A stretch of 64,000 nt of DNA from Ginglymostoma cirratum (GCA_024137785.1 JAHRHZ010000084.1:6736321-6800320), one strand, 5' to 3'; counted from the first letter of the stretch, positions 39,894 to 61,879 are shown. Notes: generated from the letters alone by a model not told the origin. Translations and numbers: made by a program.

Positions 39894-40096
39894 TCAAGGA
39901 CACTCAGGACCCCTCTCCTTCTTACGGTGTTTCTTGTGTTTTGATGCAGCTCCATTAACATTTGGTCCAGCTCTTGGGTTCACAGCTGGCGTTGAACGAT
40001 TATCTTTTCTTAATCCTTGTTCTTTGCATTTGGGATTCATTGGTATTGGCTCAGAGCATCGAACACATTGTCTCGTTCGAATATTGCCTTTAGGAG
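39894..40096 (-). CDS. Exon 5, cytoplasmic tail APKGNIRTRQCVRCSEP...KHKKHRKKERGPECP*
   Basis: Acceptor tgtttttcttacAG, open phase-1 frame of 67 residues ending in TGA. Joining across the 9.4-kb intron is inferred. Confidence 0.72.
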
Positions 40097-43000
40097 CTGT
40101 AAGAAAAACACCATTAAATATAAGGAGCAGTATATCTGGAATGGAATTGGACAGTATCGGTCAAGATAAGGTGTTTGTTTTGTCAAATTAATGAATGGAC
40201 ACATTTTCTAAAAATAAATCATTTATATAGTAACTTTCACATCATCCCAAAATACTCCACGTCCTATGAAATACTTTTGCAAGTGCAGTCACCATTTTAT
40301 GAATACACACAACAGAGTTGCCTTTTGAACCAGTAATAACACAGTGATCAATTAATCTCCTGCAGCATTATTTCAATTTGATACCCAGCATTCATTATCT
40401 TTCATGACAAAGATTAATTCCCATTATTGAGTTCATGACAAATTGGTTTTTCACATGTTGTATCGCAGTTAACTAGAAAGATTCTGGGTGTATAATCTAC
40501 ACTGAAATATCATTGTGAGCAAGTGCTGCAATGTATGGTGTGCCATCATTGGGTGGCATGTTAAAAAAAAGCTTCATCTGCTCTGTAAGAGGCACATGAA
40601 AGATCCCAAAACACAATTTCAAGAAGAGCAGAGATGGTCTTACATGGCATATTACAAAACAGAAAATCTAGCCAACGCATAGCTTCAAACAAAAGCAAAA
40701 CACTACGGATACTGGCAAATCTGAAATGTAAACAAAAAGGCCCAAAGAAACTCAGAAGGTCTGGCAGCATCTGTGGAGAGAGAAACAGAGTTAATGTTTC
40801 AATTCTAATATGACTCTCCTTCAGAACTTCAAAAGAATCATATGGGAATTAAAACATTTAACTCCGTTTTTCTCTCTCGGGAAGCTGTCAGACCTGCTGC
40901 TTTTATGTATACATTATGAATGCATGCATTAACCTACAAACCAGATATCAATTTGTTTAATTTACAAAACAGAGGACCATTTCCATTTTAACAGATGAAT
41001 AAATGGCAAGTAACAGTCACATTATACAAATGCCAAGCAATAACCATCTCCAATAATGTGGTGGTGCCGGTGTTGGGGTGGACAAGTTCAGTAATCACAT
41101 GACACCAGATTATAGTCCAAACAGATTTATGTGAAATCACAAGCTTTCAAAGCACTGTTTCTTCGTCAGGTATCGTCTTCACCTGATGAAGCAGCAGCGC
41201 TCCGAAAGCTTCTGATTTCAAGTAAACCTGTTGGACTATAACCTGGTGTCATGTGATTTCTGACCATCTCTAATCAGAGAGCACCTAACCATCTCCCTTT
41301 GAAATACAAAGGCATTAGCATTAATTAATGTCCTACTAGCAACAACCTAGAAATTAATGTTGTCTAGAAACTGAACTGTACCAGCCACCTAAGTACTATA
41401 GCTAGAAAAGGAGATCAGAGGCTTGGAAGTCTGCAGCAAGGAACTCATCTCCTGACTCTCCAAAGCCTGTCCACTGTCTGCATCAGAGATAAAAGGTACT
41501 GCAGATGCTGGAGAATCCGAGATAACAAGGCGTGGGGCTGGAATGAACACCAGCAAGCCAAGCAGCATCATAGGAGCAGGAAAACTTGATGTTTCGGGCC
41601 TAGACCCTTCATCAGAAATGGGGGAGGGGAAGAGGGTTCTGAAATAAATAGGGAGAGAGGGGGNNNNNNNNNNNNNNNNNNNNNNNNNNNNNNNNNNNNN
41701 NNNNNNNNNNNNNNNNNNNNNNNNNNNNNNNNNNNNNNNNNNNNNNNNNNNNNNNNNNNNNNNTTGAGGTGGGAGGAGGGGATAGGTGAGAGGAAAAACA
41801 CGTTAGGGAGGTGGAGATGAGCTGGGCTGGTTTTGGGATGCGGTTGGGGGAGGGGAGATTTTGAAGCTTGTGAAATCCACATTGATCATCCAGCCCCCTT
41901 GACCTGTCCGTCCTCCCTGGACTGACCTATCTCCTCCCTACCCCCTCACCTACACTCACCTTTACTGGCTCCATCCCCGCCTCTTCAACTTGTCTGCCTC
42001 CTCTCCACCTATCCTCTCCTCTATCCGCCTCCCCCTCTCTCCCTATTTATTTCAGAACCCTCTTCCCCTCCCCCATTTCTGTTGAAGGGTCTAGGCCCGA
42101 AACGTCAAGTTTTCCTGCTCCTATGATGCTGCTTGGCCTGCTGTGTTCATTCAGCTCCACACCTTGTTATCTCAGACTGCAAATGTTGGCCGTATTAGTG
42201 ATGTCACATCCCATGAAAGAATAAAAAGCTAACATCTATATAAAAAGAAGCAATTATTTAAAAACCTCCGTTTTGCTGCTCAAGAATCTTTAAAGCATGA
42301 AGATTTCTACAAACATGAATCAAGGATATGCTGGCTAACATTCTTTAAGTTCTCCATACAACTACTACTATCATCATGGGACAAGTTTGTATTATGATGT
42401 CTGGCTTGGTTATCCATTCAATGTTCTCCAGAAATGCCAGATAGTGAACAGACCTTAGTGAGCAATTTGATGTAATATGCATGGCCACAACGACACTTCA
42501 CTCATAGACCACCAACTACTGGCTGCCTTGTCGATACCCAATGCAAATTTGGGAGATGAAGATCAGGGGCTTTTTGATGACCACCTATATTTGGCCTCCC
42601 TGTGTATGCAAATTCATTGGGAGTTTACCAGCTAATATCATCACTCAAACCTTTGATTCCCTCAAAGTTTAAAAATCTGTCTACCACAGCCTTGAATATA
42701 ACTAATGATCAAGTCTCAATAGCCCTCTGTGGTAGGTGCAGGAGAAAAACTAAATGCAACAATTAAAAATCAGACTACATTAATTACAAATATTAATTAT
42801 AATTAACTTGAGACATTTTGAGCTATGAGCCAATGGTAAATGGAACATTGGATATTTTTGATTCTACAGATTTTGACTGAAAAATGAATTAACAGCTGAA
42901 ATAAATCAGCTGTCATTTCAAACAAACCTATGGGATTTGGTTTCCATTCTGCGCATTCAATGGATTTTTATTTCATAACCTGAAGGAATGCAAAATAAAA

Positions 43001-46000: not shown

Positions 46001-49000
46001 GGGGACATGGCTAATAACGAGATCAATCTTGTATGTAATCGTTGTAATGCAAAATATTCAAAAATGCTGTACTTGAGTGGGAAGGGCAGAATGGACACTA
46101 TTCCACTCCCATGCTGCACGGTAAAGAACTCTGAATAAAGACTGACTTGTGCTGCTATATACAGGACTGGAGACTTCACTTTGACTTCTCTCTCTCCCCA
46201 ACATCCTGCTTAAGTAATGAAACCAAATTGTACACGGCACTCCATATGTCTTATCAGTACTTTGCACAGCTGCATCTAGACTTCGAGATAGTAAGAACTG
46301 CCGATACGGGAGTCTGAGATAACACAGTATGGAGCTGGAGGAATACAGGTGGTCAGGCAGGGTCCTGACCCAAATCGTCAGCTTTCCTGCCCCTCCCCCA
46401 TTTCTGAAGAAGGGTCTCTACCTGAAATGTTAGCTTTCCTGCTCCTCTGATCCTGCCGGGCCTGCTGTGTTCCTCCAGCTCCACACTGTGCTCTCTGCAT
46501 CTAGACTTCCGTACTTTTATAGCCCACACCACTTGTGATAACGGCTAACATTCTATTTGCCTTTCTAATTATCTGTTGTATCCATGCAGTAACTATTTTT
46601 GATTTGTACACACAAAAACTCAGATCCCTCTGTACCATAAGCATTCTGCAGTCTCTTTCCATGGAAATAATATTCTGCTATATGATTGCTGCCTAACTTG
46701 TGGAGATGTTGCATGAGATGGTCAAGAGATGACTGCCCCCTGTATTACATTATCATCTTTCCATAGACCAGCATTGCAAATCTACCATCTTTAAAAGGTG
46801 ACAATGCATTCCAGTAGCAGTGTAAAAAGTCTTCCATGTGCACCATTTTCAAAGCACTTCCACAGCTAGTCTTGCCCCATAGGCATCTGAAAATCTAATC
46901 CTTTGAATTGTATTCTATCCATGTGGAGAGAAGGCAAAACATTACTGTGCATTTAAATGTACTCACCTAATCTGGATGTTCTTGGTGCTTACAAAAGTTT
47001 TCTGTTCACTAACACACTTTACATTAATGAACTCAAAAGTAAATTGTATAAAATGTTAACTATGTATCCAAAAATGAGCTATTGCAGATTTATCAGAGAG
47101 AGCAAGAACTGTACATACTGAAGTCAGAGACCACACAGTATGGAGCTGGAGGAACACAGCAGGCCAGGCAGCATCAAAGGAGCAGGAAAGTTGATGTTTC
47201 GGGTCGGGACCCTTCTTCAGAGAACAGATTTATTATAGTTTTGAGGGTCATACGGCATGGGAATAGGCCTTTAGGTCTAACCAGTCCATGCCAACATAAT
47301 CCCAAACTAAAGTAGCCCCACCTGTATGCTGTCAGTCTATATCCCTCCAAACCTTTCCCATTTACGTAATTATCCAAACGTCTTTTAAATTATATTATTG
47401 GGCCCACATCCACGACTTGCTCAGAAAGTTTATTCCACATGCAAACCAACCTCTGTGAAACATTTGCCCCTACGTTTTTCTTTAAAATCTTTCTCCTCTC
47501 ACCTTAAAAATGCCCCTCAAGTCTTGAAAGCCTCTATCTTAGGGAAAAGACACCTAACATTAAAAACTGAAAGAACTGGGATGCTGTAAATCAGGCGCAG
47601 AAACAGAAGTTGCTGGAAGCTCAGCAGGTCTGGCAGCATCTGTGAAAATAAAACCAGAGTTCACATTTGGGTCCGGTGATCCTTCCTCAGAATCCAGTTC
47701 TGAGGAAGGGTCACTGAACACAAAACATTAACTCTGAATTTTTCTTCACAGATGCTGCCAAGACCTGCTGAGTTTCCAGCAACTTCTGCTTTTACACCTA
47801 CCATTAACCCTATCCATACCCCTCATTATTTTATAAAAACTTCTATATGGTCACCTCTCAGCCTCTTACACTCCAGTGAGAAAAGTCCCATCCTACTTTG
47901 TAACTCAAACCGAGCAATATCCTGGTAAATCGCTTCTGAAACCTCTCCAGGTTAATAATATCCTTCCTATCACTAGGCAACCAAAAGTGAACACTGTTTT
48001 CCAGAAGAGGCCTCACCAATGTCCTGTACAACCTCAAAATGACTTCCCACCTCCTATTATTCAAAGGGCTGAGCAATGAAAGCAAGTGTGTGAAAACATC
48101 TTTTTAATCACTCTGTCTAGATGTGATACAAACTTCAAGGAATTGTGTACCTTAACCCGTAGATCTCTCTGTTCTACAGCCCCACAATTAATTGTATAAG
48201 TCCGACCCCTGTTTGTGGTACCAAAATGCAATAGCTCGTTTTATCCAGATTGAACTGCATCTGCCATTTTTCAGTCCTCTAACCCATTTGATCAAGATCT
48301 GTCTGTAATCTTAAAAAAGCCATCTTCACTGCCTACTACACCACCAATTTTGGTGTTGTCTGCAACCATGCCTTCTATCATCTCATCCAAATCATTTTTA
48401 TTAATGACAAACAAAAGAGGACCCAGGAGCAATCCCTGTGGAATGCTGCTGGTGACAGGCCTCCAGTCCGAAAATCTACGCTCCACCACCACTCTCTGTC
48501 TCCTGCTGTTCAGCCAATTATGTATCCAATTGGCAAGCTCACTCTGAATCCCATGTGACCTAACTATACTGATTAGTCTATCATATCAAAGCTTGTTGAA
48601 GGCTTTATTCAAATCTAAATAGATAACATCTACTGCTCTGCCCTCAATGTTTTTGGTAGCTTCCTCTAAAAACTCAAATCAAGTTTATAAGACACGATTT
48701 TCCTCGCACAAAACAATGCTGACTGTCGCTAATCAACTTTTACCTCTAAGTATTTCCACAATAAACAAAAATGATACTGCTGGAAAACTGCATTTGCTAT
48801 AATGTAGCAAACAATATGTAATTTGTTTGTGAACACTTTGCTCTTACTTCCGAAGAAATTGCAAATATGTCTGCAGAGAACACAAGTATAACTTCACTAG
48901 AAGCTCTGAACAGAATAGGTCTTGGAAATGCGATTTGTCATTTGATATGTAACTATGACATGCTTCAATCCAACAGTAAATTTTCTTAACACATACTAGA

Positions 49001-52000
49001 GTAGTCAAATGTTGAATTATTATTTAAAAAGAAATCACATGATTAATTTGGATTCTTGTTTTTTTTCCCTATCTATCCTGCTTTTTTACAATCCTATTTT
49101 TTTACATTCACCCCTAACAATTTACCCACAACCAATTTCAGATACAAAGGTCTAAAGTTCCTGGTTTCCCTTACAATCCTTCTTAAACAAGGGTACAAGA
49201 TTAGCCAGCCTCAAGTCATCAGGGACCTCACCCATAGTTATAGATGATGCAAATATTTCTGCAAGAGGTCATGCAATTACTTCTCACAATGTTCTGGCAT
49301 AAATTAGTTTAGGTCTTATCCACCATTAATATCCTCTAAGACCTCCAGAACTTCCGCTTCTGTAATGTAAACTATTTTTTAAAACATCAAAATTTATTTC
49401 CCTGCCTTCTCTAGCCTCCCTTTCTCCAGAGTAAAACTTCTCAACTTGTTGTCTTTGTGTATTTGCATAACTCATTAATATTAAATCTAGAAGTTCTAAC
49501 TATCATGTAACTAGATGGCTACTTACCTTTACGTTTACAGCATTTACAACAAATGACCACCACAATAATAATCAGAAGGAATGAAGATATTGCTACACAG
49601 ATGTAGATCCACCAAGGAAGAAGAGATTCACTGAAACTAGGATCTGCAAGAAACACACAAAAAGAAAAAAGGTATTCAATTTTAGTAGAAACACACTGGT
49701 ATGTTAGAACAACAGATGCTTACTTAATTCAGACTCCAGGTTATTCTGATGGCACTTTACAGATGATATTGTGAACTTAAGTTGCCTGCACAATAACGGC
49801 ATGGCAGGCTTTACATCCAACATTCCAATGTGGGCCATAACAGTACTTCAAACATATATGCTTCCTCTTCAAATATGTTAGGTGTGTGTTTGAACATTTG
49901 AATGCAGTTCCTACACAGTTTGGTTCAGAATAGCAATAGATTGGTTATATCACATACAGAATCCATAAGACTAGAAGTGAAAAATTGGAGAATTGAACGC
50001 GTCAATGACTGCGCTCTTCAAAAGATGAGGTAAGAATTTTATTCTCTGCATCTTATCTACATCATATTTAACTTGGATATATTTGCACAAAAAGAAAATG
50101 TTATTCTTCAGAACATTCATCTTTGTTCAGTTAGAATAAGCTATCCTCAAATATGAAAAATGCAAAAATATTTCCACGATAAACAAAAATAATGATACTG
50201 CTGGAAAACTGCATTTGCAATAATGTAGCAAAAATATGTAACTTGTTTTGTGAACAAATTTAATTGCTCTTACTTTCAAAGAAACTGCAAATATGTTTTC
50301 AGAGAACACAAATCTCACTTCTCTAGAAGATCTAGAGAATAGAATAGATCTTGGAAATTTGATTTGTCACTTGAAATGTAACTACAACGTACACCAGTCC
50401 AACAGTAAATTTTCTTAACACATACTACAGTAGTCAATGTTGAATTATTAGTTATTTAAATAGAAAGCACATGATTGATTTGAATTCTTGATAATTCTTG
50501 ATAATCTCTCTTTCCATCTATCCTGCTTAATGAATTTATATATGGTATCTGTCGCAACCTTGGGATTTTGGAAGTGCTTTGCAGCCAGTTAAGGACATTT
50601 AAATATGCAGCCAATTTGTGCGCAGCAATGAGCACAGTGGAAAGTAAGCCAGGGCTATTGAAACAGAAATATGAATTTAAATTACACCACAGCTGCAGGA
50701 GAATTAGCATTCAATTAATCAATTAAATTTAACATAAAAATGATACCATGTAGTAACTTCTGGATTATCATAAAACCCCTACTGGTTCACCGAGGTCTTT
50801 CAGAAAAGGAAATAAGCCATCCTTTCCCTTTCTGGCTAATACGTACACCTAGATTAATGCAACTCATTCTTATCGTTTTAGAATATCATGGGTAATTTGA
50901 AATAAATATTGTCAGTGATATTCACATACTGTGAATGAAAAGCACGGTGAGGCTTCAGCTCATTGTGCTAACCTCTTGTTGACTTTTGATCACAGTGCAT
51001 TATCAGATCTGCCTGGAACTGCAGACCTATCAGCCTTACATCAGTAGTCAGGGAAATGCTACAATTAGAAAGTACATGAAAAATGAACACTTACATAAAA
51101 ATTCTTCGTTTGGTCGCATTCTGCATGGACAAATTTGTTGATTTTGTTTTGAGGATGCTGGTAGCAAAACTGGTAAAGGGGAGTCAATGTTTGTACTACA
51201 TTAAGATTAATGGTAAGGTCCCCCACAGACATTTAGTTTGAAAAATTAAAGCATATGGTACAGAAAGTAATGTACTGGCATGGAATTGAGATTATGTTCT
51301 GTGTTAGCCGATATAGGAAGAAGTGGGTTATTCTCAGATTGACAGACTGAGACGAGTGGGATACTACTGGGTCCAGCTGTTCACAATACAGAAAATGATT
51401 TGGCTATCTGAAGCGAACATAATATTTTCAAATTTGCAGATAATACAAAGCTAAGCAGGAACGTGTGTTAAGAGGAAGATATGAAACATTTTCAGGAGGA
51501 TTTGGTCAGGCTGTGATTGGGCAACAATGTGCCAGATGGAATAAAATGTGGAAAAAAAATCAGGTTATCAACTTTGGCAAGAAGCACAGGTGTGCAGAGT
51601 ATTTCTTAAATAGTGAGAGGTTGGAAAATGTAGATGTTCAAAGGTGACTAGCTGTCCTTGTCAATAAATCACTGACGGCTAACATGCAGGTACAATAAGC
51701 TTGTAGGAAGGCAGAAAGAACATTAGCAAGAGGATTTGAGTACTAGTGAATCTTTGCTTTAATTATGAAAGAATTTAGTTTAGATTATGGATGAATAATA
51801 AATGCTGGCCCAGCCAGTGACATCCTCATCCCCTGAATGAGGAAGATAAAAATGCCACACCTGGACTACCGTGTGCAGTTTTGGCCTTGTTATCTCAGGA
51901 AAGATAATATTTCCATTATGGGAGAACAACAAAGTGTTACCAGACTTGCTCCAGGATGGCTGAATTGTCTTATAAACACAGATTGGGCAAACTGGGCCTA

Positions 52001-55000
52001 TATTCCATAGAGTTTCACTCAAGAAGTGACCTCATTGAAAACTACAAAACACTTAAAAGGAATAGACAGTGTAGATGCAGGTAAGATGTTTCTCCTGGCA
52101 GGGGAGTCTAGAATCAGGAGATACAATTTAAAAATAAGGGAGATGCCACATAGGTCTGTGGTGAAGATAAACTTTTTTTTCTACTCAAGAGGTTGATTAT
52201 CCATGGAATTCTCAATCACAGAGGGCTGTGGAAGCCCAGTCTTTGAGTATGTAGACATTGAGAAATTTCTGAATCCCCACAGATGGTTATGGGGATGGGG
52301 TAGGGAGCTGTTCAGGAAAGTTAATATGCATCTTGTTCTCTGGTTCAGGTTGGAGGGACGAACTTGTTGATCTTTTTGATGTATTAGAGTCGTTATTTAA
52401 AAACCAACAGTTGTATGGAATGTTGATAAGACCACAATAAAGGAGGGGATGGGATATTCTAGATGTGAGAAGGAGAATAATAAAAGAATAAGGGACATGG
52501 GTTTATTTTCTGTGTGGCCACGTATGCATGGAGCTGCAAGTATAAATAACAATACATTATCGTATTGAAATGTCCAAAGAATATCCCATAAATAGACAAG
52601 GAAATTTTTGAACTGTCAAGATGCCTCTTGAAACGATCTGAGGATACTCTCCCCAAATGCATTTTTGTAATCAATAAGCTGTTGTTTGATTTACTTTGCA
52701 GTTTACTTGTGATGATTTTACAACAGAAATATATTGAGTAAAATTAATCTTTAAAATTGGTGAAAAATTGCATCACTGAGGATGGTAGTTGCAGTTGATA
52801 CACCAGGCCATCAGGCTTGATCAATTTCACCAAATTTTTCAAAATCACCAGCCCTGCACTTACAGCCTCTCAGGCATTTATGGTGAAAACGCTTCCAACC
52901 AAATGCAGTGAAGCCACAGCATGCTCAATTTCACAACTAAATAAGCATTGCTCTTACCTGGAATGCCAACAGTGTAATTGGCGCTAGTTGGATCCTGGAG
53001 GGTAGAGTGTGATACCTCACAGACATAAACAGTTCCAGTATGAACCGGCTGAGTTTCTACCAAATAACTGGTAACTTCATAAAGTCCCTCAGCATTCTTT
53101 GTTCTGGATGTCTTTATTCCCGTTCCAACATTTTGACCATCTTTACGCCAAGCAATAGTGTAATCATCAGGATAGAACGCAGATGTTTTACACATACATG
53201 TTAGAAAGCCGTTTGCAGAAAACTTTGGAATAATCTTCAGAGGATGTGGAGAAGCTATAGAAAAATTTAAAGAAAGATTTCTTAATTTCCAAGTTAGACT
53301 GCATTTACAGTATATTTCTTTGGGTAATGTTTAACATCAGTGTACTTGTTTTTTTACTTATTACCTGGTTCATAGAATCCTTTTTTGATACAATCGTGAT
53401 TTACTCTGTATTAATTTTAGAGCCTGGCTGTTGAGAAAATTCTGACATAACATTAAATAGAAATGTGGGGTATTTGCAACACGTTGTAGTGTAATAAGAC
53501 TGCATACAAAAATGTGGATTATACAAGAATTTACTGGATGAATATATTATTTGTTGGTTCAATCTCTGGTCAGCATTGGATTAATTAGTGCCATTTTTCA
53601 TGATAATAATTGGCTTAGGTTCAAGTCTGATATGCTCCAGAGATGTGTCATAACATCTCTGAACAAGTTGATTACAAATATCTCTGAGACTAAGTAGGGA
53701 AAATTAAATGAGCCATGTTTCAAATTGCTATCCAACGGTGCCTGTGAAAATGTTTACTGAGAATATCCACTCAACGTAATTGATTTTGTTGGAAATATTT
53801 TGTGAAATTCATTGTTCATGCTAACTGACAGGATACTTTAGCGCTATCTCTGCTCAACAGGAAAAGGAGAATGATAATCACTATGTCAGCTACTTGCATG
53901 GAGTACGTTAAATTTTATAAGACAAAATACTGCAGGGCTGAACGGGGAGGATACTGAGAGGTCCTATTGCAGAGACCTGGCACAAACATAAAGGCTGAAT
54001 GGCGAAGTATTATTCTGTAACCATCGTATGATTTAATTTTACATTTCTCAGTATTCTGGAATCAAGAATATAATTCTGACAATTTCCCCTGGAAAAGGTT
54101 TCAATAAAAATAATCATTGCTCGTTTCGAAATCTGGCACGTATTACTGCAGAAAAGATCCCAACAGAAGAACCAACATGACAAGTACAACACAGGAACAA
54201 TTTGTTTAGGGAAACTAGAACATGTGCATGTTTGCATTTCTTTTTGGTCATTTGTGTAACATGAGCATTTGGCCAGCATTTTCTGGTTGTTCTCAGTTGT
54301 TCTTGAGAAGGTGATGGTGAGCTGCCTTCTTGAACTGCTGCAGTCTATGAGCTGTAATTGGGCTGAAAGTGCCCTTTGGGAGATAACTTCAAGATTTTTC
54401 CCCAGTGGCAGTGAAATACGTTGCCAAGTCTAGATGGTGAGTGGCTTCAAGGGGAACTTGCAGATAGTACTGTTGCAGTTTACCTGCTGCCCTTATCTTT
54501 CTAGATAGTAGTGCAAATGGGTTCAGAAGGTGCTGTCTGAAGATCCTTGGCAAATTTATGCAGGACATCTTGTAGATAATCCAGTGTGAGCATTGTGATG
54601 GAGTTACTGAATGCTTACGGATGTGTTGCCAATCACGTAGGCCACTTTGCCCAGGCAAGTGGCGAGAATTCCATCATTTTGGAGAATCTGGAGGTGACTT
54701 ATTCTTTGCAGTATTCGTAGGCTCTGACCTGCTAACTAAACTAGAGATAAATAGCTTTAAAAGCAGGATGAAAAAGATGGACCTTGAATTTAAACATTTA
54801 ATTTGCTTTTAAATGGACACTGCATTTATCTATGCCTGACCTGATGTGGGACTGTTTGATGTTAGCACTGGGTGCCTGAATTGAAACATTGCCATCTTAT
54901 TCCGTTAACCTATAGGTGATTCATTTAATGCAATATTACGAAATGAGACAGTTAAATGGCAAATTTGCAACAATTTGGATTGACACAAAAGCTGTTGACA

Positions 55001-58000
55001 TCAGTATGATCAACAGCTGACTAAACTAACCATCCCTCAAGGAGACTAAGTTGCTGTGGCAACATGCACAGAGCTATGGCAGAGGCTGTAGGTTTCTCAC
55101 CTTCACCTGGATGTGTGATCAGACAGTTGAACAGGGATCTCTCTTGCTGTTACTTCTCTTACTGGTGTGTGTTGAATGAATTTATAAGTTGATGCTCATA
55201 CATTGCTTGCCATCAAGACATGGAGTGCAATTTGAACCAGAAGAATCTGGCTCAGAGGCAACAAAACTGCCATTGTACCATAACACTTCCAGAGAGGAAT
55301 CAGGGAAAGTAAATGTAGGCCCATTAGAAGCAGAAACAGGCGAAAGTATAACAGGGAATGAGGAAATGGCAGAAGCATTGAACAGATACAATGCATCTGT
55401 TTTCACAGCAGAAGACAAAACTAAAGGCTGCAAAAAGGGGCAACCAAATGCCCTGTAAAAACTAGAAAATTAAAAGAAATCCATATCAGTAGAAAATCTA
55501 ATGGGACTAAGAGGTCATTAGTCCTCTGTTCCTGAAAAATCTGTATCATAAAGTTTTAAAAGGGGTAGCAGCAGAGATCATTGGTGCATTATTTTTATTT
55601 CCAGAATTCCTTAGATTAAATATAATTCATAAGAATCAATAGGTAGCTGACATAAACTCTATTACTTAACAAAGGGGTAAGGGCTAAAACCGGAACTGTG
55701 GGCCAAATAATTGAGTATTCATAGGTAAATGCTAGATGTTATTGTTAGAGGCAGGGTAACAGAGCTCTTAGAAAATCATATGATTAAGCAAAGTTGACAT
55801 GAAATGAAACAGTTTCTGTTAGGATCTTTTTGAGGATGTAACTGCAAAGATTGTTCAGGTCGTTGGATTTTTTTTTTGTTCTGAGGTTTCCAAAATGTAT
55901 TCAATAAGGTTATGAAACAAAGTTAGTATTCATAAGATTTGATGTCACATATTAGCATGGATTGAGAGCAAGTGAAAGACAATGTGAAAAGGGAAGTTAT
56001 TCCCTTGGTAGTTATTCCGCTAGCCTGAAGTGCAGTGTAGTTTTGGTCTCCTTACTTAAACAAGGACATGAAGGTTCACAACAGAAGAAGGGAATTGTCC
56101 TTTGATGAGGTTGAGTTGGCTCATCTGTTACTGTCTAGAATTGGGAAGACTGAGAGTTGGTTTAACTGGAACATGCAAAATATTTTGAAGAGGGTGCCCA
56201 GGATAGAAAGTGTTCCTCCTGTCTGAGGTCTATGAACAAAGGTCAACCATTTTGGAATCCTAGGGGCAGTGGATGTTGAATGTGGTCAAGATTGAGATCA
56301 ATAATCTCGGGGTACCAAGGGAGTAAATGGATATTGGGTCCAGGAATGAAACGATTAGTGATATTCTGTGTGAAGGTGCCTTTGGTGCATATCAGTCAGG
56401 ATATTGTTGAATATTAGAGTAGTCTTGACGGGTCAACCACCAGCTTCTACTTCTTAACGTCCTTGTTTTTAACATGGTCTAGCCGTGAGCCGAACGGCCT
56501 ATTTCACTGTTCCATCTATGGAAAATCTATGCTATAAATATTTCACATTCAGCAATGTAAAACATTTTTATATTCTACCATAACTTGCAGCCATGGGCTA
56601 GAGACTAACAACAAGGTTAACTGCAGAGTCTGCCAGTTCTTCACATTTCAAACTGCCGATAAAACCCAAAAATGAAGTCAGTGATTGGATTAAACTCATC
56701 ACATCCCACATTCATAACGAAGGTTAGATTTCGGGCAGGTTAGCCTCAAGCCACTGACCTGACTGCATTCTAAGCCACACCAACATCACAGCTTATAATG
56801 GAAGCGAGATTTTACTTTTTAGAAAAACCTGGTTGTTAGCTTAGATAATAAATTATAGGGCACGGGGAGGACCGCAAATAGCCAGTCTGACGGCTGATTC
56901 GAACGACGTTAAAAAGTTACAAGGTCCTAAAATCAGACCTTGCGTTTTCTTACCCGATTGTTATCTACTCGTTTGAACTGTTCCTCTGGAGTTAGGTTAA
57001 GCTTTGAAACGCTAATGTAAAGCGAGTAGCTGGGCTTGAATCCTCTGAATTGTTGACGATTTGGGAGGAACATGCATTTGACATGAAATTGAATCGTTAA
57101 ACATTTTTGCCATTTAGAAACTAAATATTCTGTTTTGAAAGTTATGGCTTCTTACTTTCAGGGGTTCGGATTGTTGTTATCTAGATTTGAGACCGATCTG
57201 CATTTCACTTAGAGCACGGGCAGACATGCTCAGACATGGTTAAAAAGCTTTTCAAATAAATAAAACAAAGGACAGCGGATGAACATCTGAAACAAAAGCA
57301 GAATTGTTGGCGAAACTCTGGCAGGCATTTGTGGAGACAAAGTACAGCTAACGTTTCCAGTCCAGTGACCCTCCTTCAGAACTGACGCCTTTCGTACCAT
57401 TTTTATGCGGGGCGACTCGCCCGCTCTTAACCATCGCTCCCGAAATAATAGCCGCAGCTTCAGCACGGCTCAAATGGCGTTCATATGACTACGTTTTGGG
57501 AATGCAGTTCTGTGATGTTCAATCTTGGAACTTCAGTATTTCCTAATGTGATTGTTGCAATATAAGGGTTTGGGCAGTCATAGAGTCATAGGGATGTACA
57601 GCACGGAAACAGACCTTATGTCCAACTCGTCCATGCTGACCAGATATCCTAAATTAATCTAGTCCCATTTGCCAGCATTTGGCTCATATCCCTCTAAACT
57701 TGTCCTATTCACATACCCATCAAGGTGCCATTTAAAATGTTGTAATTGTACCAGCTTTCACCACTTCCCCAGCAGATAATTCTATACATGCACCACCCTT
57801 TGCGTGTAAAAGTTGTCCCTTCCGTCCTTTTAAAATCTCTCTCGTCACTTTTACTGTGATTTGTAACTTGGCGCATGATCCAACATGGTTCATTTTACAC
57901 AGAGGCAAACAATTCAGTTACTACGTGTACAGCCAACATGTAATAGCGCTTCAGCGTGCGCAATTCGCGTCTCTGCCAAATTGTATTATCGTTGAGATTA

Positions 58001-60298
58001 TCCGTTTAATACAACCGCACCAATTCAGAATCACTTCCAGCGGCCCTCAACTGTTATTGCGAATTAGCTGCTGTTTCTTCAATAATTCGCAATAACAGTT
58101 AAGGGCCGCTAGAAGAGATTCTGAATTAGTGCGGTGGTGTTAAACGGATAATCTCAACGATAATACAATTTGGCAGATACGCGAATTGCGCACACAGAAT
58201 CGCTATTATATTTTGGCGTACGAACAGTAAATGAATTGTTATCCTCTGTGTAAAATAGACTACGTCGGACCCTGTGACAAGTTATAAATCTCGGTTTAAA
58301 AGCAAATGAAGTCAAGACAGAAGTGCCGCAGATAAAATCAACATCGTGGGTCCCTGCTGTTCAAGAGTCAAGCTGTGACTCAGGTTGGCGGAATACCATA
58401 ATCTGACTGCAATTACTTTTAAACTCCTTCATATTTCCGAGTGCGATTATACTGCATTCGGGAGAATAATGTTGCGGACTAGCTGGAGTAACTCGTTAAA
58501 AAAAAACAATCATTTCGGTCCAGAGATCCTACCACAGAGAAACGAAAACCTCAACTTGTTTCTACGGTCAGGATTAGAAAAGCTCTCCACGGTATTCTAT
58601 AAACTCAAACATTCTTCACCTTCCCATGCTCATGTTATTCATACCGTTTAAAAAACAACCGGCTTAAATAATAGCCCCAGAATTTCTTCAATAAATCCTG
58701 GACAAGAACCGTAATTTCTTTTTCACTATTTCACGTTTATCGAGCGCGAGATTCTTTCTCTCTCACTTGTAGAAGGATGAGGATGTAACTCAACACGGGC
58801 TGATTTATCTAAACCGCCAATGTACATAAAATGGTGCAGCTTTCCTTGCAAAAATGATTGAAGGTTAGTCGGTAGAAGTTTTTTCAAAAAATTTCGACCC
58901 GCAGACATCTAGCTTTGGTGTTGGCAAGTCCGCAGTTTTAATTTCGGAAATTCCCCGACAAAGGGTTAGCAATGAAGTGGTTGAACTGCGTCCGAAACTC
59001 GCAGATGTCATTACCGTGTAGAGGGAGGTCGAGAATAAGTTAGAGATTTCACTGGATGGAAGGTGAACGATAATGAGAAACTCAGTTCACGATAACGATG
59101 CAAAATGTAACATCAGAGCAGATTGCGAAATGTGTATTTTGAAAAATGTATTTGACTTCCGGCAGTAAAAGATTTCGAAATCGCAGCTAAAACAGAAGCG
59201 TGCTGTCGCTACTCTCCCCTTGCTGTACCCCACTGACAAATGCCGAATATTCAGTTTTCGGCTCTGAATTTTCAGCAACAAGAGCGCATACTTCCCGCGG
59301 CCAGTGAGTAATGTTGGTTAAAGCTGCACCCAAGTTGTTCCATTTTCCCGGATACGAAAGCTTGTTGCACACTGGGTGTTCAATCAAACATCTGCATTGA
59401 ATCATAGAATCCTTACATTGTGGGTAAAACGCGTTTTAACCCATCGAGTCTGCACAGACCCTCTAAGGAGCATCGCAACCAAACCCAGGACCGACCTGTA
59501 ACCCTGTATTTACCATTGCCAAGCCACCTAACCTACACACATTTGGACTCTGAATCTACGCTACAGGAGAGAAAATGCCCATTATTTGCATTATCCTTCC
59601 CAGCCGTCCTCTCGTTTCAACTTTCCTGTCCCTCTAACTGCCGTGTATTCCACGTTGCTGAGAGTGATTACTCACCGTTTACATTCAGCCGTTGGCCAGT
59701 TCCATTTCCAGTATATTCACCCTGCACCCTGCAATAATAGACGCCAGCGTCTCCGAAACGCACATTGTGAATGCGCAGAATGGCGCTGGCTTTGCTGTCA
59801 ATCTGGAACTGTCTCCTCGAATCCTGTTTCGAGCTCAAGAATTCGCGGTCGCCCTCTTTCCACCAGTGCACCGTGATTTGGTTTGGATCTCGGAAGAGCG
59901 GGAACGAGCAGTAAAATGTCACTGTCTGTCCTACGATCGGATCGGACGGTGTCAGAAATTGAGACACTTTAGCGGCCGCTGTCGCGAAAACAAACAAAAA
60001 CACCAAACGTTTATTTACAGGAGGGCGGCGGCGAGGGGAAAACTTGTAGCAGCAAATAAGGAAACAACTAGGGCTCAGCAGCGGCGCTTATGATTGCTTA
60101 GAAATTTTTTTTTCGAAAGGCTAGAAATTCCATAAAGAACATGTATTTACAATTTATGGCTTAAGTTGTTACAAGTCATGCCCGTACATAGAAAAAGTTG
60201 TAAACTGTACACGCGAAATAATCTACGTAGCAACCACTGAATTGAAGACACTTACCTGTACAAGAAAGGATCAGGACGAGCACAGGGCGAAGTTCCAT
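39894..60298 (-). CDS. Five-exon IgSF receptor gene, leader-V(J)-C1-TM-cytoplasmic, 320 aa (exons 60298-60256, 59978-59676, 53254-52958, 49643-49527, 40096-39894)
   Basis: All introns are GT-AG and phase 1. Exon lengths 43+303+297+117+203 = 963 nt give one open frame ending in TGA. Domain hallmarks are listed under the individual exons. Confidence 0.88.
40690..40900. repeat. Palindromic short element (ctggcagcatctgtggagagagaaacagagttaa family)
   Basis: Inverted arms. Same family as 26360-26530, 36380-36560, 47560-47795 and 57270-57385. Confidence 0.7.
41060..41265. mobile_element. Palindromic Penelope-derived element with hammerhead-like cores on both strands
   Basis: Plus 41183-41211 CTGATGA...GAAAGCTT; minus 41141-41169 CTGACGA...GAAAGCTT. 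Confidence 0.75.
41485..42180. mobile_element. Young Penelope-type element with inverted termini spanning the assembly gap
   Basis: 41520-41663 is the reverse complement of about 42030-42175. Hammerhead cores at 41588-41615 (-) and about 42079-42106 (+). Confidence 0.8.
41664..41763. other. Assembly gap (100 N)
   Basis: Run of n characters. Confidence 1.
44040..44540 (-). mobile_element. Degenerate CR1 3' end
   Basis: ataggagcaggagtag...cctgctccagcattcaata-type CR1 3' UTR. Confidence 0.65.
46285..46495. repeat. Palindromic Penelope-derived short element with target-site duplication
   Basis: ctgcatctagacttc occurs on both flanks (~46270 and ~46495), with inverted arms. Confidence 0.75.
47235..49440 (-). 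mobile_element. Degenerate CR1 LINE with nested palindromic element (47560-47795) and a captured local duplication (48752-49085)
   Basis: ORFs 47858-48085 (LYRTLVRPLLE) and 48292-48492 (PQGLLLGPLLF). Confidence 0.88.
48752..49085 (+). repeat. Direct repeat copy 1 (partner 50170-50528)
   Basis: Shared aatgatactgctggaaaactgcatttgc ... ccaacagtaaattttcttaacacatacta ... atctatcctgctt. Confidence 0.9.
49527..49643 (-). CDS. Exon 4, transmembrane exon DPSFSESLLPWWIYICVAISSFLLIIIVVVICCKCCKRK
   Basis: Strong polypyrimidine acceptor (ttttctttttgtgtgtttcttgcAG), 117 nt, about 22 hydrophobic residues then a Cys/basic stop-transfer, donor AAG|GTAAGT. Confidence 0.92.
50170..50528 (+). repeat. Direct repeat copy 2 (partner 48752-49085)
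   Basis: As for copy 1. Confidence 0.9.
51130..52290 (+). mobile_element. Old degenerate CR1 LINE
   Basis: aaatttgcagataatacaaagcta (KFADNTKL) followed by downstream CR1 motifs. Confidence 0.75.
52958..53254 (-). CDS. Exon 3, Ig C1-set domain
   Basis: ASPHPLKII...LTCMCKTSAFYPDDYTIAWRKDG...NAEGLYEVTSYL...YVCEVSHSTL shows the C1-set FYP, Trp, GxY and YxCxVxH motifs. Acceptor tttttctatAG, donor CAG|GTAAGA. Confidence 0.95.
55300..56530 (+). mobile_element. Old degenerate CR1 LINE
   Basis: KVNVGPLE..TGE.ITGNEEMAEALN motif typical of CR1 ORF2. Confidence 0.7.
57577..57842 (-). mobile_element. CR1 3'-end fragment
   Basis: (gtcataga)n tail and 3' UTR matching the reverse complement of about 10270-10530. 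Confidence 0.85.
57850..58299. repeat. Long near-perfect inverted repeat / hairpin (arms ~217 bp, 16-nt loop 58067-58082) in the V-C1 intron
   Basis: 57850-58066 is the reverse complement of 58083-58299. The inner ~110 bp have about 7 mismatches. Confidence 0.95.
59398..59555 (-). mobile_element. Partial HE1-like SINE
   Basis: catagaatcc tail and cacctaacctacacacatttggac core, reverse orientation. Confidence 0.65.
59676..59978 (-). CDS. Exon 2, Ig V-set domain with germline J-like G strand
   Basis: AAAKVSQ...GQTVTFYC...VHWWK...LRIHNVRFGDAGVYYCRVQGEYTGNGTGQRLNVN shows the B-strand Cys, C-strand Trp, DxGxYYC and GxGT motifs. Acceptor ttttcgcgacAG, donor ACG|GTGAGT. Confidence 0.95.
60256..60298 (-). 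CDS. Exon 1, signal peptide MELRPVLVLILSCT(A)
   Basis: ATG in GAGGAATGG context, hydrophobic core, donor CAG|GTAAGT. Continues into AAA-KVSQ (plausible cleavage site) in the V exon. Confidence 0.85.
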
Positions 60299-61879
60299 TC
60301 CTCGGGACGTGATGATATATGGAACAGAGGCCCAACTGAGTACCTGACCCCCAACTGGTTTGAGCGGGATGGCAGGGCGAGGGTGGTCACTTCGTTTTTT
60401 TTCCACTCTCTTAAGCTCATGTGAAGTGCAATCGTTCAGTGTCACGCTTGCAGTCTTGCGGTTTCAGTACTGTTTTGGTAGGCAAGGTCTACAAACCACG
60501 ACGTGTATTTGAAACAGAAATAACCGATGGTTTCGTTTCGTACCAAGCGTTGAAAACTTTTTATCTGAAGCAGAAATCAAAAGTCATATCCATATGAGAC
60601 GGCAATATGTGTCTGTGGGGCGTTCTGACAAAGTTGAGGGAGCGAACTGTAACGTCCAGTCAGTTTCCTCTACTCTAGAGTGTGATATGCTACCTCCAGA
60701 CACAGACCTACAAGGTTAATGCTTCACAAAAGCTTCAAGCACTAGAGAATCCCCAACCCCACCCAACTTGGCGCTTCCTCAATACCCACTAACTTTATCT
60801 GCAAACGCCACCTCACCCTCTGGCAATTGGCCTCCAGCTATCTCAAGGTGGAGGGATTAAAAGTGGACCTCGCAAAACATTCAAGCAACCCTCTCATCAA
60901 ATACCTACACACGCCCGTTTTCCTGTCTCACCAACCTGCCGCAAGCCAAAAAGGAGAAAATAGTTTGATTTGCTGATTGGAACGGAAGTAATTCCCACAA
61001 TAGTAGTTGTTCAGGGACGTTTTTACTCAGACTTAACACTCACCATCTTTTACATTCACTGTTTCAGTGCCTTGTATAATGCATAGCACCAGAAACATGT
61101 CATTAGGGCGAACCAGCCCACACATTTATGCTCCGTACAAGCCTTCCAAACCCATTGAAATAAAATGCTCTTGCATTTTCCTTCATACATTTAATAAGTT
61201 TTCCTCTAAAATGTGTCCATTCCATTCGCCTCAACTCCACTGTGGTCGCAAATTATGGACTCCACTCTCTAGATAAAGAAGTTTTTCCTGAGTTACCTGT
61301 CGGAGTTAGCATTCAGGGTCTCATATTTACGCCCTCGAGACCAACTCGCCCCACAAGTGGCAATGTCTTCTGAAACAGCCTTAATCTTATTGATTTTAAT
61401 CATTCACCAGACTTCACAAAAGTTGTTTGATCCAAGGACAGGAATTCCGTGAAATGTGAGGCGCGCCCTCAATAAGCAGAAACGTGAGGAATCACTGTCG
61501 CCAAAATTGAACCGGAAGAGAAATCTCTCAAGTGATGAAATGAGCGAGAACCATAATAAAATGAACTAGGTTTAACAATTACAGGATTTCGTACCATGAA
61601 ACGTCTGTAAATTTTCAACCAATCCCAATAAAACCAAGCGGTGAAACATGATACTGACCTTTTCTTTCCAGGTCCTTACAACCATTTCCGGTATCCCCTG
61701 CAATCTCGACTTGTCTCTCGTATCCATCAATTGCATTTCTCATTTTAGTTTTTGTACAACTTTGAGTGAGATGTTGAGATTATCAGACCCTGCTGACTGT
61801 ATGTTAGGACAGAATATTGGAATCCTAATCCTATGTCCCTTAGTATTTAGTCTTCCAATATCAAAGCCTTTCTTAGCCA

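What the first reader, a model, noticed from the sequence alone, without database searches (positions are those of the whole stretch)
39894..60298. Intact non-rearranging antigen-receptor-like gene: germline VJ-C1-TM receptor in a shark-like genome
Seen in sequence: five phase-1 exons splice into a 320-aa type I membrane protein. One exon encodes a complete V domain including the J-like GxGT G strand (CRVQGEYTGNGTGQRLNV), followed by a C1-set domain. I found no RSS heptamer/nonamer pairs near the V exon. Established: C1-set domains are restricted mostly to Ig, TCR, MHC/b2m, tapasin, SIRP and B7H6-type molecules, and germline-joined VJ domains with a GNGT strand occur in NCR3/NKp30. Inference: leader-VJ-C1-TM is the layout predicted for the pre-RAG ancestor of TCR/Ig light chains, so this may belong to a poorly described chondrichthyan receptor family. 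The ORF track shows only disconnected pieces of it.
Basis: partly seen in the sequence, partly recalled or inferred. Interest (0 to 1): 0.88.

Follow-up and report, generated by a model that had tools for sequence, protein, structure and literature searches.

The report
Shark germline V-C1 receptor, tyrosine-less tail
This is a real, spliced and transcribed shark gene for a small membrane protein built like one pre-joined antibody light chain; it is the conserved, tyrosine-less member of a large SIRP-like receptor family of cartilaginous fishes that public annotation predicts but no paper I could reach describes.

Summary
Five GT-AG, phase-1 exons on the minus strand (60298-39894) add up to 963 nt, or 320 aa: leader, V-like domain with a J-like strand, C1-set domain, transmembrane segment and a 67-aa tail. 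RNA contigs and poly-A RNA-seq reads show the V-to-C1, C1-to-TM and TM-to-tail splices. The N gap (41664-41763) lies in intron 4, and the mRNA joins straight across that intron. No RSS is present.

The gene is not an orphan. Near-colinear proteins (318-328 aa) are predicted in sharks, rays and a chimaera under contradictory automatic names: Ig lambda-like, SIRP-alpha-like, B7H6-like, CD276, tapasin-like. V and C1 trees put the window gene in an orthogroup that follows the species tree. ITIM-bearing paralogues form the other side of the tree and lie on the same chromosomes.

This scan has already found the wider SIRP-like V-C1 family on other DNA of this genome. New here is the conserved member without a tyrosine motif or a charged TM residue, but with a CCKCC cluster, an invariant CxRC motif and a polybasic end.

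The V domain is short (no C'/C'' strands predicted) and no closer to Ig/TCR V than to other Ig domains. The "pre-RAG ancestor" reading is therefore not specifically supported.

The parts
60256..60298 (-). Exon 1: start codon and signal peptide (MELRPVLVLILSCT plus the first base of the next codon). The donor is GTAAGT.
   Evidence: Read. It is colinear with the orthologue N-termini. The X1 RNA contig has 436 nt upstream of exon 3, which equals E1+E2 (346 nt) plus about 90 nt of 5' UTR.
59676..59978 (-). Exon 2: V-like Ig domain (101 codons, phase 1-1), including the J-like G strand.
   Evidence: Read. Pfam gives Ig_3 5e-11, V-set 1e-8 and I-set 3.5e-8. The AlphaFold model has pLDDT 86. The donor is used in RNA: the loose end at 53255 equals the end of this exon.
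59680..59709 (-). J-like motif G-N-G-T-G-Q-R-L-N-V. It reads as GxG..LxV in the register GTGQRLNV and overlaps an N-G-T glycosylation sequon.
   Evidence: Sequence read. GNGTG is invariant in 15 orthologues and nearly invariant in the wider family.
52958..53254 (-). Exon 3: C1-set Ig domain (99 codons, phase 1-1).
   Evidence: Read. Pfam C1-set 3.9e-11. PDB matches Ig C and UrIg2 at 1e-20 and 5e-20. The orthologue model matches C1 domains at Z 13-15, rmsd 1.3-2.0 A. The FYP motif, the 13-residue Cys-Trp spacing and the EVSH motif are all present (criteria from PMC2785349). Both splice sites are used in RNA.
49527..49643 (-). Exon 4: short stalk, transmembrane helix (about 49546-49614) with no charged residue, and the juxtamembrane CCKCC cluster (49537-49551).
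   Evidence: Read. The orthologue model has a helix at 228-254. The joint 49643/52958 appears in four runs. This exon is absent from the 284-289-aa isoforms predicted in five other species.
41664..41763 (.). Assembly gap (N), inside intron 4.
   Evidence: Located. The mRNA joins 49527 directly to 40096, so the gap touches no coding sequence.
39894..40096 (-). Exon 5: cytoplasmic tail (67 codons plus TGA). It has no tyrosine, a CVRC motif at 40056-40067 and a polybasic C-terminus (KHKKHRKKER).
   Evidence: Read. Its first 30 nt are found joined to exon 4 in four RNA runs. The tail is colinear in 15 orthologues, with invariant C-x-R-C.

Best explanation
This is an intact, expressed, non-rearranging gene for a 320-aa type I membrane glycoprotein. 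It has a signal peptide, one short V/I-type Ig domain whose G strand carries a J-like GxG..LxV motif, one genuine C1-set domain, an uncharged transmembrane helix and a 67-aa basic tail without tyrosine.

It is the window species' copy of a one-per-genome orthogroup found in sharks, rays and a chimaera. That orthogroup is the conserved branch of a large chondrichthyan V(J)-C1 receptor family. The family's other members carry ITIM-type tails and sit on the same chromosome. Its nearest named relatives are the SIRPs.

Shown: gene structure, splicing, transcription, domain types, orthology, and absence of RSS.

Inferred mechanism:
- The V-like domain, whose F-G loop CRVxGExxGNGTG is almost invariant over the shark-chimaera split, binds a conserved, non-polymorphic ligand.
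- The C1 domain acts as a spacer or as a cis-pairing module.
- The CCKCC cluster is palmitoylated.
- With no ITIM, ITAM or charged TM residue, the protein does not signal through SHP phosphatases or DAP12-type adaptors. It would act as an adhesion, ligand or decoy-type family member, comparable in role to SIRP-gamma.
- The conserved CxRC and polybasic tail may add something not yet understood.
- Skipping of the in-phase TM exon gives a soluble form in other species.
For: Structure and expression:
- Exons and phases were read directly.
- RNA joints and loose ends confirm three of the four splices in up to four runs, including raw poly-A RNA-seq reads. One run holds a 4066-nt contig at depth 182.

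Domain types:
- Pfam C1-set 3.9e-11.
- The three C1 hallmarks named in PMC2785349 are met.
- Structural matches to C1 domains at Z 13-15.

Orthology:
- Orthologues of 318-328 aa are colinear end to end, tail included.
- V and C1 trees place the window exons in an orthogroup (17 rows, SH-aLRT 96, in the V tree) that follows the species tree. The nearest sequence is Rhincodon, at 85% identity in V and 95% in C1.

Family context:
- ITIM paralogues form the other side of the tree and lie on contigs of identical length to the orthologue's in six species.
- Earlier scan notes place such genes 61-549 kb from this window.
- The tail has no tyrosine in 14 of 15 orthologues and an invariant CxRC.
- TM-less isoforms are predicted in five species.
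- The best non-chondrichthyan profile hit is a SIRP-alpha-like protein, E 1.7e-25.
Against: - Function, ligand and cell type are untested.
- The SIRP lead comes from SIRP having two C1 domains. Per domain, SIRP scores no better than Ig kappa C (33-45 against 32-35 bits), and SIRP d1 scores below Ig kappa V. 'SIRP-like' is therefore a label of convenience.
- A 67-aa tail conserved for more than 400 My argues against a purely passive role.
- The homodimer prediction gave no answer.
- The TM-less isoform was not seen in this species' reads. The reads table hid five loose ends.
- E1-E2 splicing was not checked with reads.
Confidence: 0.75

Rival explanations
1. It is a B7-type ligand (B7H6/NCR3LG1, CD276 or PD-L-like) rather than a receptor: a conserved V-C membrane protein recognised by the fast-evolving receptors encoded nearby.
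For: - NCBI names several orthologues 'NCR3 ligand 1-like' or 'CD276 homolog'.
- Two-domain structural matches with the lowest rmsd are B7-H6, PD-L1, PD-L2, B7-H3 and butyrophilin (Z about 14, rmsd 3.4-5 A over 184-193 residues).
- The Atlas feature search returns CD80-like/BTN, CD200, HHLA2 and PD-L1 clusters.
- One-to-one conservation and a tail without signalling motifs are typical of ligands.
Against: - In both trees the orthogroup is sister to the ITIM receptors and shares their GNGTG strand and C1 domain at 35-50% identity.
- The profile match to B7-H6 in the PDB covers only the end of V plus C1, and is no better than the match to Ig or SIRP.
- The interdomain geometry of an AlphaFold model is weak evidence.
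Confidence: 0.12
2. It is a surviving relative of the non-rearranging VJ-C1 gene that the RAG transposon invaded. On this reading it is specifically close to Ig light chains and TCR chains.
For: - It has the V(J)-C1-TM layout in phase-1 exons.
- Foldseek's best matches are Fab light chains (4e-16, 21-25% identity).
- The profile matches an Ig chain over V through C (2rcj_C, 2.4e-30) and UrIg2 (2.9e-25).
Against: - The V domain lacks predicted C'/C'' strands.
- Its sequence neighbours are I-set domains.
- The orthogroup V profile matches Ig kappa V only over FR3-J.
- An N-glycan sequon sits in the J-like bulge, where Ig and TCR V domains pack against each other (inference from the sequence).
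- It is probably not on the MHC chromosome.
- The literature's candidates, UrIg and UrIg2, are linked to the MHC and to the Ig/TCR cluster (PMC12227049).
Confidence: 0.08
3. It is the cartilaginous-fish NKp30 (NCR3) gene, here carrying an additional C1 domain.
For: - NCBI labels the V-only isoform of the sawfish orthologue 'NCR3-like'.
- NKp30 is the V-domain structure with nearly the highest identity to the window's V model (27% over 99 residues, Z 12.1).
- From memory, NKp30 also has a GNGT J-like strand.
Against: - From established knowledge, NKp30 has no C domain, has an arginine in its TM helix and is MHC-linked. This protein has a C1 domain and an uncharged TM helix, and its white-shark orthologue is on a 193.5-Mb chromosome, not chromosome 19.
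- Z 12.1 is tied with about 50 unrelated V and I domains.
Confidence: 0.04

Closest known systems
SIRP family (SIRP-alpha, -beta, -gamma; structure 2wng)
   Same: N-terminal V-type domain with a J-like strand, followed directly by C1-set domains, on a type I membrane protein. Not rearranging. The family has inhibitory members and members without signalling motifs. It gives the best non-chondrichthyan profile hit (E 1.7e-25), and 2wng aligns colinearly over V and C1.
   Different: There is one C1 domain instead of two. This member has no ITIM and no basic TM residue. The V domain is shorter. Per-domain scores are no better than for Ig kappa. No orthology was shown.
UrIg / UrIg2 (shark non-rearranging antibody-like genes; 9dmx)
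   Same: Elasmobranch genes that do not rearrange, with a single-exon VJ followed by C1. The UrIg2 C domains are among the best PDB matches of the C1 exon (5.4e-20).
   Different: UrIg2 was crystallised as V-C1-C2-C3 and is a disulfide-linked dimer with an Fc-like part. It is linked to the Ig/TCR cluster, and UrIg to the MHC (PMC12227049). Here there is one C1 domain, a TM helix, no stalk cysteine and a different chromosome context.
NKp30 (NCR3)
   Same: Non-rearranging V(J)-type domain with a short, I-like fold and a GNGT-type G strand. The structural match has 27% identity.
   Different: NKp30 has no C1 domain and has a charged TM residue for adaptor pairing. It is MHC-linked in most vertebrates.
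B7H6 and other B7-family V-C proteins
   Same: Leader, V, C, TM and tail in phase-1 exons, with an extended two-domain ectodomain. NCBI's automatic names point here.
   Different: The sequence match is confined to the end of V plus C1. This protein shares its J-like strand and its C1 hallmarks with the ITIM receptor paralogues.
PRARP (chicken and bony-vertebrate 'putative remnants of an antigen receptor precursor'; Fu et al. 2019, cited in PMC10751288)
   Same: From memory of the abstract: non-rearranging VJ plus C1 plus TM, with ITIM-type tails. That is the layout of this gene's paralogues.
   Different: No comparison was possible. This member has no ITIM.

Membership tests
C1-set Ig domain (PF07654) | Profile match above Pfam's gathering score | tested here: met
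   43.6 bits against a cut-off of 21, E 3.9e-11.
C1-set Ig domain (PF07654) | (F/Y)(F/Y/H)P at the BC loop, exactly 13 residues between the B-strand Cys and the C-strand Trp, and xVxH after the F-strand Cys (criteria from PMC2785349) | tested here: met
   The exon 3 product has MC-KTSAFYPDDYTIA-W (FYP, 13 residues) and VC-EVSH.
C1-set Ig domain (PF07654) | Fold matches solved C1 domains | tested here: met
   In the orthologue model, residues 118-217 match MHC II, Ig CL, IgNAR C, CH3 and TCR C at Z 13-15, rmsd 1.3-2.0 A.
Rearranging antigen receptors (Ig light chain, TCR) | Separate V and J segments flanked by RSS heptamer-nonamer signals | tested here: not met
   V and the J-like strand are in one exon that is spliced to C1 in mRNA. 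There is no heptamer within 1 kb and no heptamer-spacer-nonamer pair in the window.
Rearranging antigen receptors (Ig light chain, TCR) | Full V-set domain with C' and C'' strands | tested here: not met
   There are 58 residues between the two cysteines. AlphaFold/DSSP shows strands A, A', B, C, D, E, F and G only. Pfam scores Ig_3, V-set and I-set about equally.
SIRP | V domain followed by two C1-set domains | tested here: not met
   There is only one C1 exon between V and TM, and the mRNA joins C1 directly to the TM exon.
SIRP | ITIM tail (alpha) or basic TM residue (beta) | tested here: not met
   The tail has no tyrosine and the TM helix has no charged residue. By these two features it resembles SIRP-gamma.
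SIRP | Sequence closer to SIRP than to other V-C1 proteins | tested here: inconclusive
   The whole-protein profile gives E 1.7e-25 for SIRP against 1e-10 for Ig kappa. Per domain, the scores are SIRP d2/d3 33/45 bits against Ig kappa C 32-35, and SIRP d1 13 against Ig kappa V 16-18.
NKp30 / NCR3 | Single V(J) domain with no C domain, and Arg in the TM helix | tested here: not met
   A C1 exon is present and the TM helix is uncharged.
NKp30 / NCR3 | MHC linkage | tested here: inconclusive
   The white-shark orthologue is on a 193.5-Mb contig. That shark's MHC is on chromosome 19.
B7 family / B7H6 | V plus C ectodomain, and sequence affinity over both domains | tested here: inconclusive
   The architecture and the two-domain fold match. 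The profile match to 3pv6/4zso covers profile positions 84-225 only. No B7 sequences were available for a tree.
UrIg / UrIg2 | V-C1-C2-C3 antibody-like chain | tested here: not met
   There is one C domain followed by a TM exon.
PRARP | Homology to chicken or bony-fish PRARP VJ-C1 genes | not testable with these tools
   The paper is not held and no PRARP sequence was reachable.
Chondrichthyan SIRP-like V(J)-C1 receptor family (unnamed) | V and C1 domains cluster with the family, and the gene lies in the family's chromosomal neighbourhood | tested here: met
   V is 34-45% and C1 33-55% identical to the paralogues. Paralogues share chromosome-size contigs with the orthologue in six species. A decayed family C1 exon lies in the window itself.

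The most novel reading that the evidence does not exclude
The tyrosine-less orthogroup is not a passive family member. It would be the ancestral, functionally distinct founder of the chondrichthyan V(J)-C1 receptors. Its invariant juxtamembrane CxRC motif would form a zinc-clasp-type link to a cytoplasmic kinase or to a CxC-bearing co-receptor, as CD4 and CD8 do with Lck. That would be a signalling mode not known for SIRP-type receptors. Its invariant F-G loop would recognise a conserved self ligand, making it a living model of a pre-RAG V-C1 receptor.
Probability: 0.08. Interest if true: 0.75.

Novelty: new member of a known kind. Interest (0 to 1): 0.45.

Why it matters
Non-rearranging V(J)-C1 genes are the raw material for models of how antibodies and T-cell receptors began. 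The literature I could reach discusses SIRP, NKp30, PRARP and UrIg/UrIg2.

This gene shows that cartilaginous fishes also keep a strictly conserved, single-copy V(J)-C1 membrane protein beside a fast-evolving inhibitory receptor cluster. Its binding loop is almost unchanged since sharks and chimaeras split, and its tail motif (CxRC plus a polybasic end) is not one of the usual immune signalling motifs.

That makes it a tractable handle on the family. It has one orthologue per species, it is clearly expressed, and it should have a conserved ligand. It also flags that public annotation gives the same gene five unrelated names.

It does not, on present evidence, bear specially on the RAG-invasion question.

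Tried and rejected
- **Joined product.** The exons were searched one by one by reference, and the 80%-identical database orthologue P0003 stood in for the whole protein.
- **The search for homologous proteins with the 20-row family alignment A2.** It timed out. The smaller A1 worked.
- **Homodimer prediction (P0003 residues 20-222, two copies).** No verdict, score 0.00. This is evidence neither for nor against pairing.
- **Foldseek against the PDB.** Swamped by Fab light chains and not discriminating.
- **VIA searches.** They confirm the folds, but dozens of families are tied.
- **Atlas feature search.** It returned only generic V-C clusters.
- **Papers.** PMC3709836 and PMC4594805 (shark NKp30/B7H6) and the PRARP paper are not held.
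- **Search from the teleost hit P0200.** It found only three elopomorph 'hypothetical proteins'.
- **Pseudogene reading.** Rejected on RNA evidence and conservation.
- **Missing exon in the N gap.** Rejected, because the mRNA joins exon 4 to exon 5 directly.
- **3' end of the transcript.** I looked for a poly-A signal about 3.2 kb past exon 4, where the X1 contig would end. I saw none, so the 3' end is left unmapped.
Full report

Yes. The gene lies on the minus strand. I read each exon and its splice sites directly.

| Exon | Coordinates | Length | Content |
|---|---|---|---|
| E1 | 60298-60256 | 43 nt | ATG and signal peptide, donor GTAAGT |
| E2 | 59978-59676 | 303 nt | V-like domain with J-like strand |
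| E3 | 53254-52958 | 297 nt | C1-set domain |
| E4 | 49643-49527 | 117 nt | stalk, TM helix, CCKCC cluster |
| E5 | 40096-39894 | 203 nt | tail, ending in TGA |

All introns are GT..AG and all junctions are phase 1. E4 was found independently as the only strongly hydrophobic open segment between E3 and E5.

The scan program asked me to test the assembly gap at 41664-41763 first. It lies inside intron 4 (49526-40097).

**2. RNA evidence**

Public runs of the same organism hold the C1 exon. I laid three contig runs and one 2026 poly-A RNA-seq run of raw reads on 49400-53350.

- **E3-E4:** the joint 49643/52958 (CT..AC on the plus strand, so GT..AG on the gene strand) is present in all four runs, with 4 raw reads.
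- **E4-E5:** the loose end at 49527 is the reverse complement of the first 30 nt of E5, in all four runs (6 raw reads). The mature mRNA therefore joins E4 to E5 directly, and nothing coding is hidden in the N gap.
- **E2-E3:** the loose end at 53255 is the reverse complement of the last 30 nt of E2, in two runs. The V(J) exon is therefore spliced straight to C1.
- **Transcript size:** one contig is 4066 nt at depth 182. It has 436 nt before E3, which equals E1+E2 plus about 90 nt of 5' UTR. It has about 3.2 kb after E4, which points to a long 3' UTR. I could not place the end of that UTR.

Intron depth is zero or near zero in three runs. That junction rests on the splice sites, on phase and on orthologue colinearity.

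**3. Domains**

*C1 exon.* This is a textbook C1-set domain.
- Pfam gives 3.9e-11.
- The best PDB sequence matches are Ig constant domains and shark UrIg2.
- It has the three hallmarks listed by Hatherley et al. (PMC2785349): FYP at the BC loop, exactly 13 residues between Cys and Trp, and EVSH after the F-strand Cys.
- In the AlphaFold model of the orthologue P0003 (ectodomain pLDDT above 90), this domain matches MHC II, Ig CL, IgNAR C, CH3 and TCR C at Z 13-15, rmsd 1.3-2.0 A.

- Pfam scores Ig_3, V-set and I-set about equally.
- There are only 58 residues between the two cysteines.
- Both models show strands A, A', B, C, D, E, F and G, with a loop where C' and C'' would be.
- The best sequence matches in the PDB are I-set domains (Robo, titin, NCAM, contactin). 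The best full-length single-V match is shark IgNAR V.
- A structure search with the window's own V model ties B7-H4 V, VH, TCR V-beta, contactin, IgNAR V and NKp30 at Z 12-12.8. NKp30 has 27% identity.

*J-like strand.* It is real. GTGQRLNV fits GxG..LxV, and the orthologues have the perfect GTGTRLNV. It overlaps an N-G-T glycosylation sequon that is invariant in the orthogroup. A glycan at that bulge would sit where Ig and TCR V domains pack against each other. This is an inference from the sequence.

*RSS.* There is none. CACAGTG occurs 9 times in the window against 10 expected, none within 1 kb of the V exon, and no heptamer-spacer-nonamer pair exists.

**4. Relatives**

The exons were searched by reference.

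A full HMMER scan with the V exon found P0003 (323 aa, 80% identical) from Hemiscyllium. It is colinear with my model from the signal peptide to the last residue. Searches from P0003 and from the orthologue profile, plus cluster look-ups, give:

- one such protein per species in Hemiscyllium, two Chiloscyllium species, Stegostoma, Rhincodon, Heterodontus, Carcharodon, Cetorhinus, Mustelus, two Scyliorhinus species, Heptranchias and Pristiophorus;
- the same in four rays (Pristis, Hemitrygon, Hypanus, Narcine) and in the chimaera Callorhinchus.

Their automatic names contradict each other: immunoglobulin lambda-1 light chain-like, NCR3 ligand 1-like, CD276 homolog, SIRP-alpha-like, tapasin-like. 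The V-only isoform is named NCR3-like. There is therefore no curated identity.

Separate V and C1 trees (IQ-TREE quick search) place the window exons inside this orthogroup (17 rows, SH-aLRT 96, in the V tree). The topology follows the species tree. The nearest sequence is Rhincodon, at 85% identity in V and 95% in C1, so the genome is an orectolobiform shark outside Rhincodon and Stegostoma. In the C1 tree the chimaera row is on a long branch and its position is unsure.

**5. The wider family**

The remaining V-C1 hits are all chondrichthyan wherever I looked them up. They form the other side of both trees. Most carry ITIM-type tyrosine motifs.

In Carcharodon, Mustelus, Heterodontus, S. canicula, Heptranchias and Callorhinchus, these paralogues lie on a contig of exactly the same length as the orthologue's. 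In Callorhinchus their accession numbers are 8-9 away from the orthologue's.

The window itself holds a decayed family C1 exon at about 5918-6226 (minus strand). It has an in-frame TAA, Cys changed to Arg and Trp changed to Gly.

Earlier notes of this scan describe SIRP-like V-C1 ITIM receptor genes 61, 397 and 549 kb beyond this window on the same sequence piece, and several more elsewhere in the genome. I did not check those notes. The family has therefore been found before by this scan on other DNA. What is particular here is the member.

**6. What distinguishes this member**

Across 15 orthologues:
- The F-G region YYCRVxGExxGNGTG is nearly invariant.
- The membrane entry WW(I/V)YxC is invariant.
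- The TM helix has no charged residue.
- A cysteine cluster follows the helix (CCKCC in the window).
- The tail keeps an invariant C-x-R-C, a conserved Asn and a K(K/E)H(R/H)K-type polybasic end.
- 14 of 15 tails have no tyrosine at all, and 15-20 of about 65 tail residues are Lys or Arg.
- Pfam finds nothing in the tail, and AlphaFold predicts it to be disordered.

Isoforms of 284-289 aa are predicted in Hemiscyllium, Chiloscyllium, Heterodontus, Heptranchias and Callorhinchus. They lack exactly the E4 segment. Because E4 is 117 nt and phase 1-1, skipping it keeps the frame and gives a soluble protein with the basic tail. I could not see this isoform in this species' reads.

**7. Closest known kinds**

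Outside cartilaginous fishes, the orthologue profile's best hits are a camel SIRP-alpha-like protein (1.7e-25), an echidna SIRP-like protein (2e-13), a teleost hypothetical protein (1.5e-12) and Ig kappa chains (about 1e-10).

Per-domain HMMs show that the SIRP lead comes from its two C1 domains.

| Query HMM | Target | Bits |
|---|---|---|
| C1 | SIRP d3 | 45 |
| C1 | SIRP d2 | 33 |
| C1 | Ig kappa C | 32-35 |
| V | Teleost P0200 V | 30 |
| V | Ig kappa V (FR3-J only) | 16-18 |
| V | SIRP d1 | 13 |

The relatives of that teleost protein are three elopomorph hypothetical proteins only.

Against the PDB, the whole-protein profile gives similar E-values for Ig chains, UrIg2, SIRP-alpha (colinear over V and C1) and B7-H6. 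Two-domain structural matches of lowest rmsd are B7-H6, PD-L1/L2, B7-H3, butyrophilin and Neph1.

The honest statement is therefore this. It is a V(J)-C1 IgSF protein of the SIRP, B7 and antigen-receptor neighbourhood. 'SIRP-like' is the best available label, and orthology to a named gene is not demonstrable. PRARP, which I recall as VJ-C1-TM-ITIM genes of bony vertebrates and which PMC10751288 cites as an MHC-linked VJ gene, could not be compared. Neither the paper nor any sequence was reachable.

**8. Linkage**

The white-shark orthologue is on a 193.5-Mb chromosome. The white-shark MHC is on chromosome 19 (PMC10751288).

**9. Mechanism**

*Shown:* a transcribed type I membrane protein with a V-like domain, a C1 domain, a TM helix and a tail. 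It does not rearrange and it is conserved one-to-one.

*Inferred:*
- The near-invariant F-G loop and the conserved V domain argue for a conserved, non-polymorphic ligand. V is 56% identical to the chimaera's over 85 aligned residues, against 41% for C1.
- The absence of an ITIM, an ITAM and a charged TM residue argues against the usual inhibitory or adaptor-coupled signalling. This makes it the SIRP-gamma-like (adhesion, ligand or decoy) member beside inhibitory paralogues.
- The cysteine cluster is a likely palmitoylation site.
- The conserved CxRC and polybasic tail suggest an additional, unknown interaction. It could be zinc-mediated or involve acidic lipids or the cytoskeleton.

A homodimer prediction gave no verdict, so I make no claim about pairing.

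**10. Verdict**

The architecture, the lack of rearrangement and the poorly described family all hold. The special link to the pre-RAG ancestor does not.
- Novelty: a new, distinctive member of a known kind. It is predicted by automatic annotation in related species and is undescribed in the papers I could search.
- Interest is moderate.

Noticed in passing
window 5918-6226 (-): A decayed C1-set exon of the same receptor family. It is 40-44% identical to the paralogues and 32% identical to this gene. It has an in-frame TAA, the B-strand Cys changed to Arg and the C-strand Trp changed to Gly. No matching V exon was detected anywhere in the window.
   Followed up: partly
window 30-254 (+): An open frame ending ...SLDSQQCYDCQSTPNN...NAYIYKVDEIKQNLNVA*, with a QCxxC motif and tyrosines. 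It may be the tail exon of a plus-strand family gene that starts before the window (compare scan note s1-879631). I found no homology support for it.
   Followed up: partly
window 60299-60313 (-): Some orthologues (Stegostoma, Hemiscyllium and others) start four or five residues earlier (MSRxxELRP). Here that codon is ACG, so translation must start at the Met of MELRP, as it does in Rhincodon.
   Followed up: partly
window 40088-40090 (-): Run X4 carries GGC>AGC (Gly>Ser) in the third full codon of exon 5. This is a coding polymorphism between individuals.
   Followed up: no
window 51776-51907: A short stretch inside intron 3 has RNA depth in all four runs, with loose ends on both sides and a C>T difference at 51870. 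It looks like a repeat transcribed from other loci, not an exon of this gene.
   Followed up: no
window 23379-26397 (+), 29118-31517 (-), 9333-9874 (+), 47858-48492 (-): LINE-type endonuclease and reverse-transcriptase open frames and fragments fill the intergenic region and intron 4. The two largest copies are in opposite orientation.
   Followed up: no
proteins P0200, P0204, P0205 (Aldrovandia, Synaphobranchus, Albula): Elopomorph fish 'hypothetical proteins' have a V domain ending in GNGTELxVLAPPSAPQ, then a C1-like domain with a long insertion, then a TM helix. They are the nearest non-chondrichthyan match to this V domain (30 bits), and I found no name for them.
   Followed up: partly
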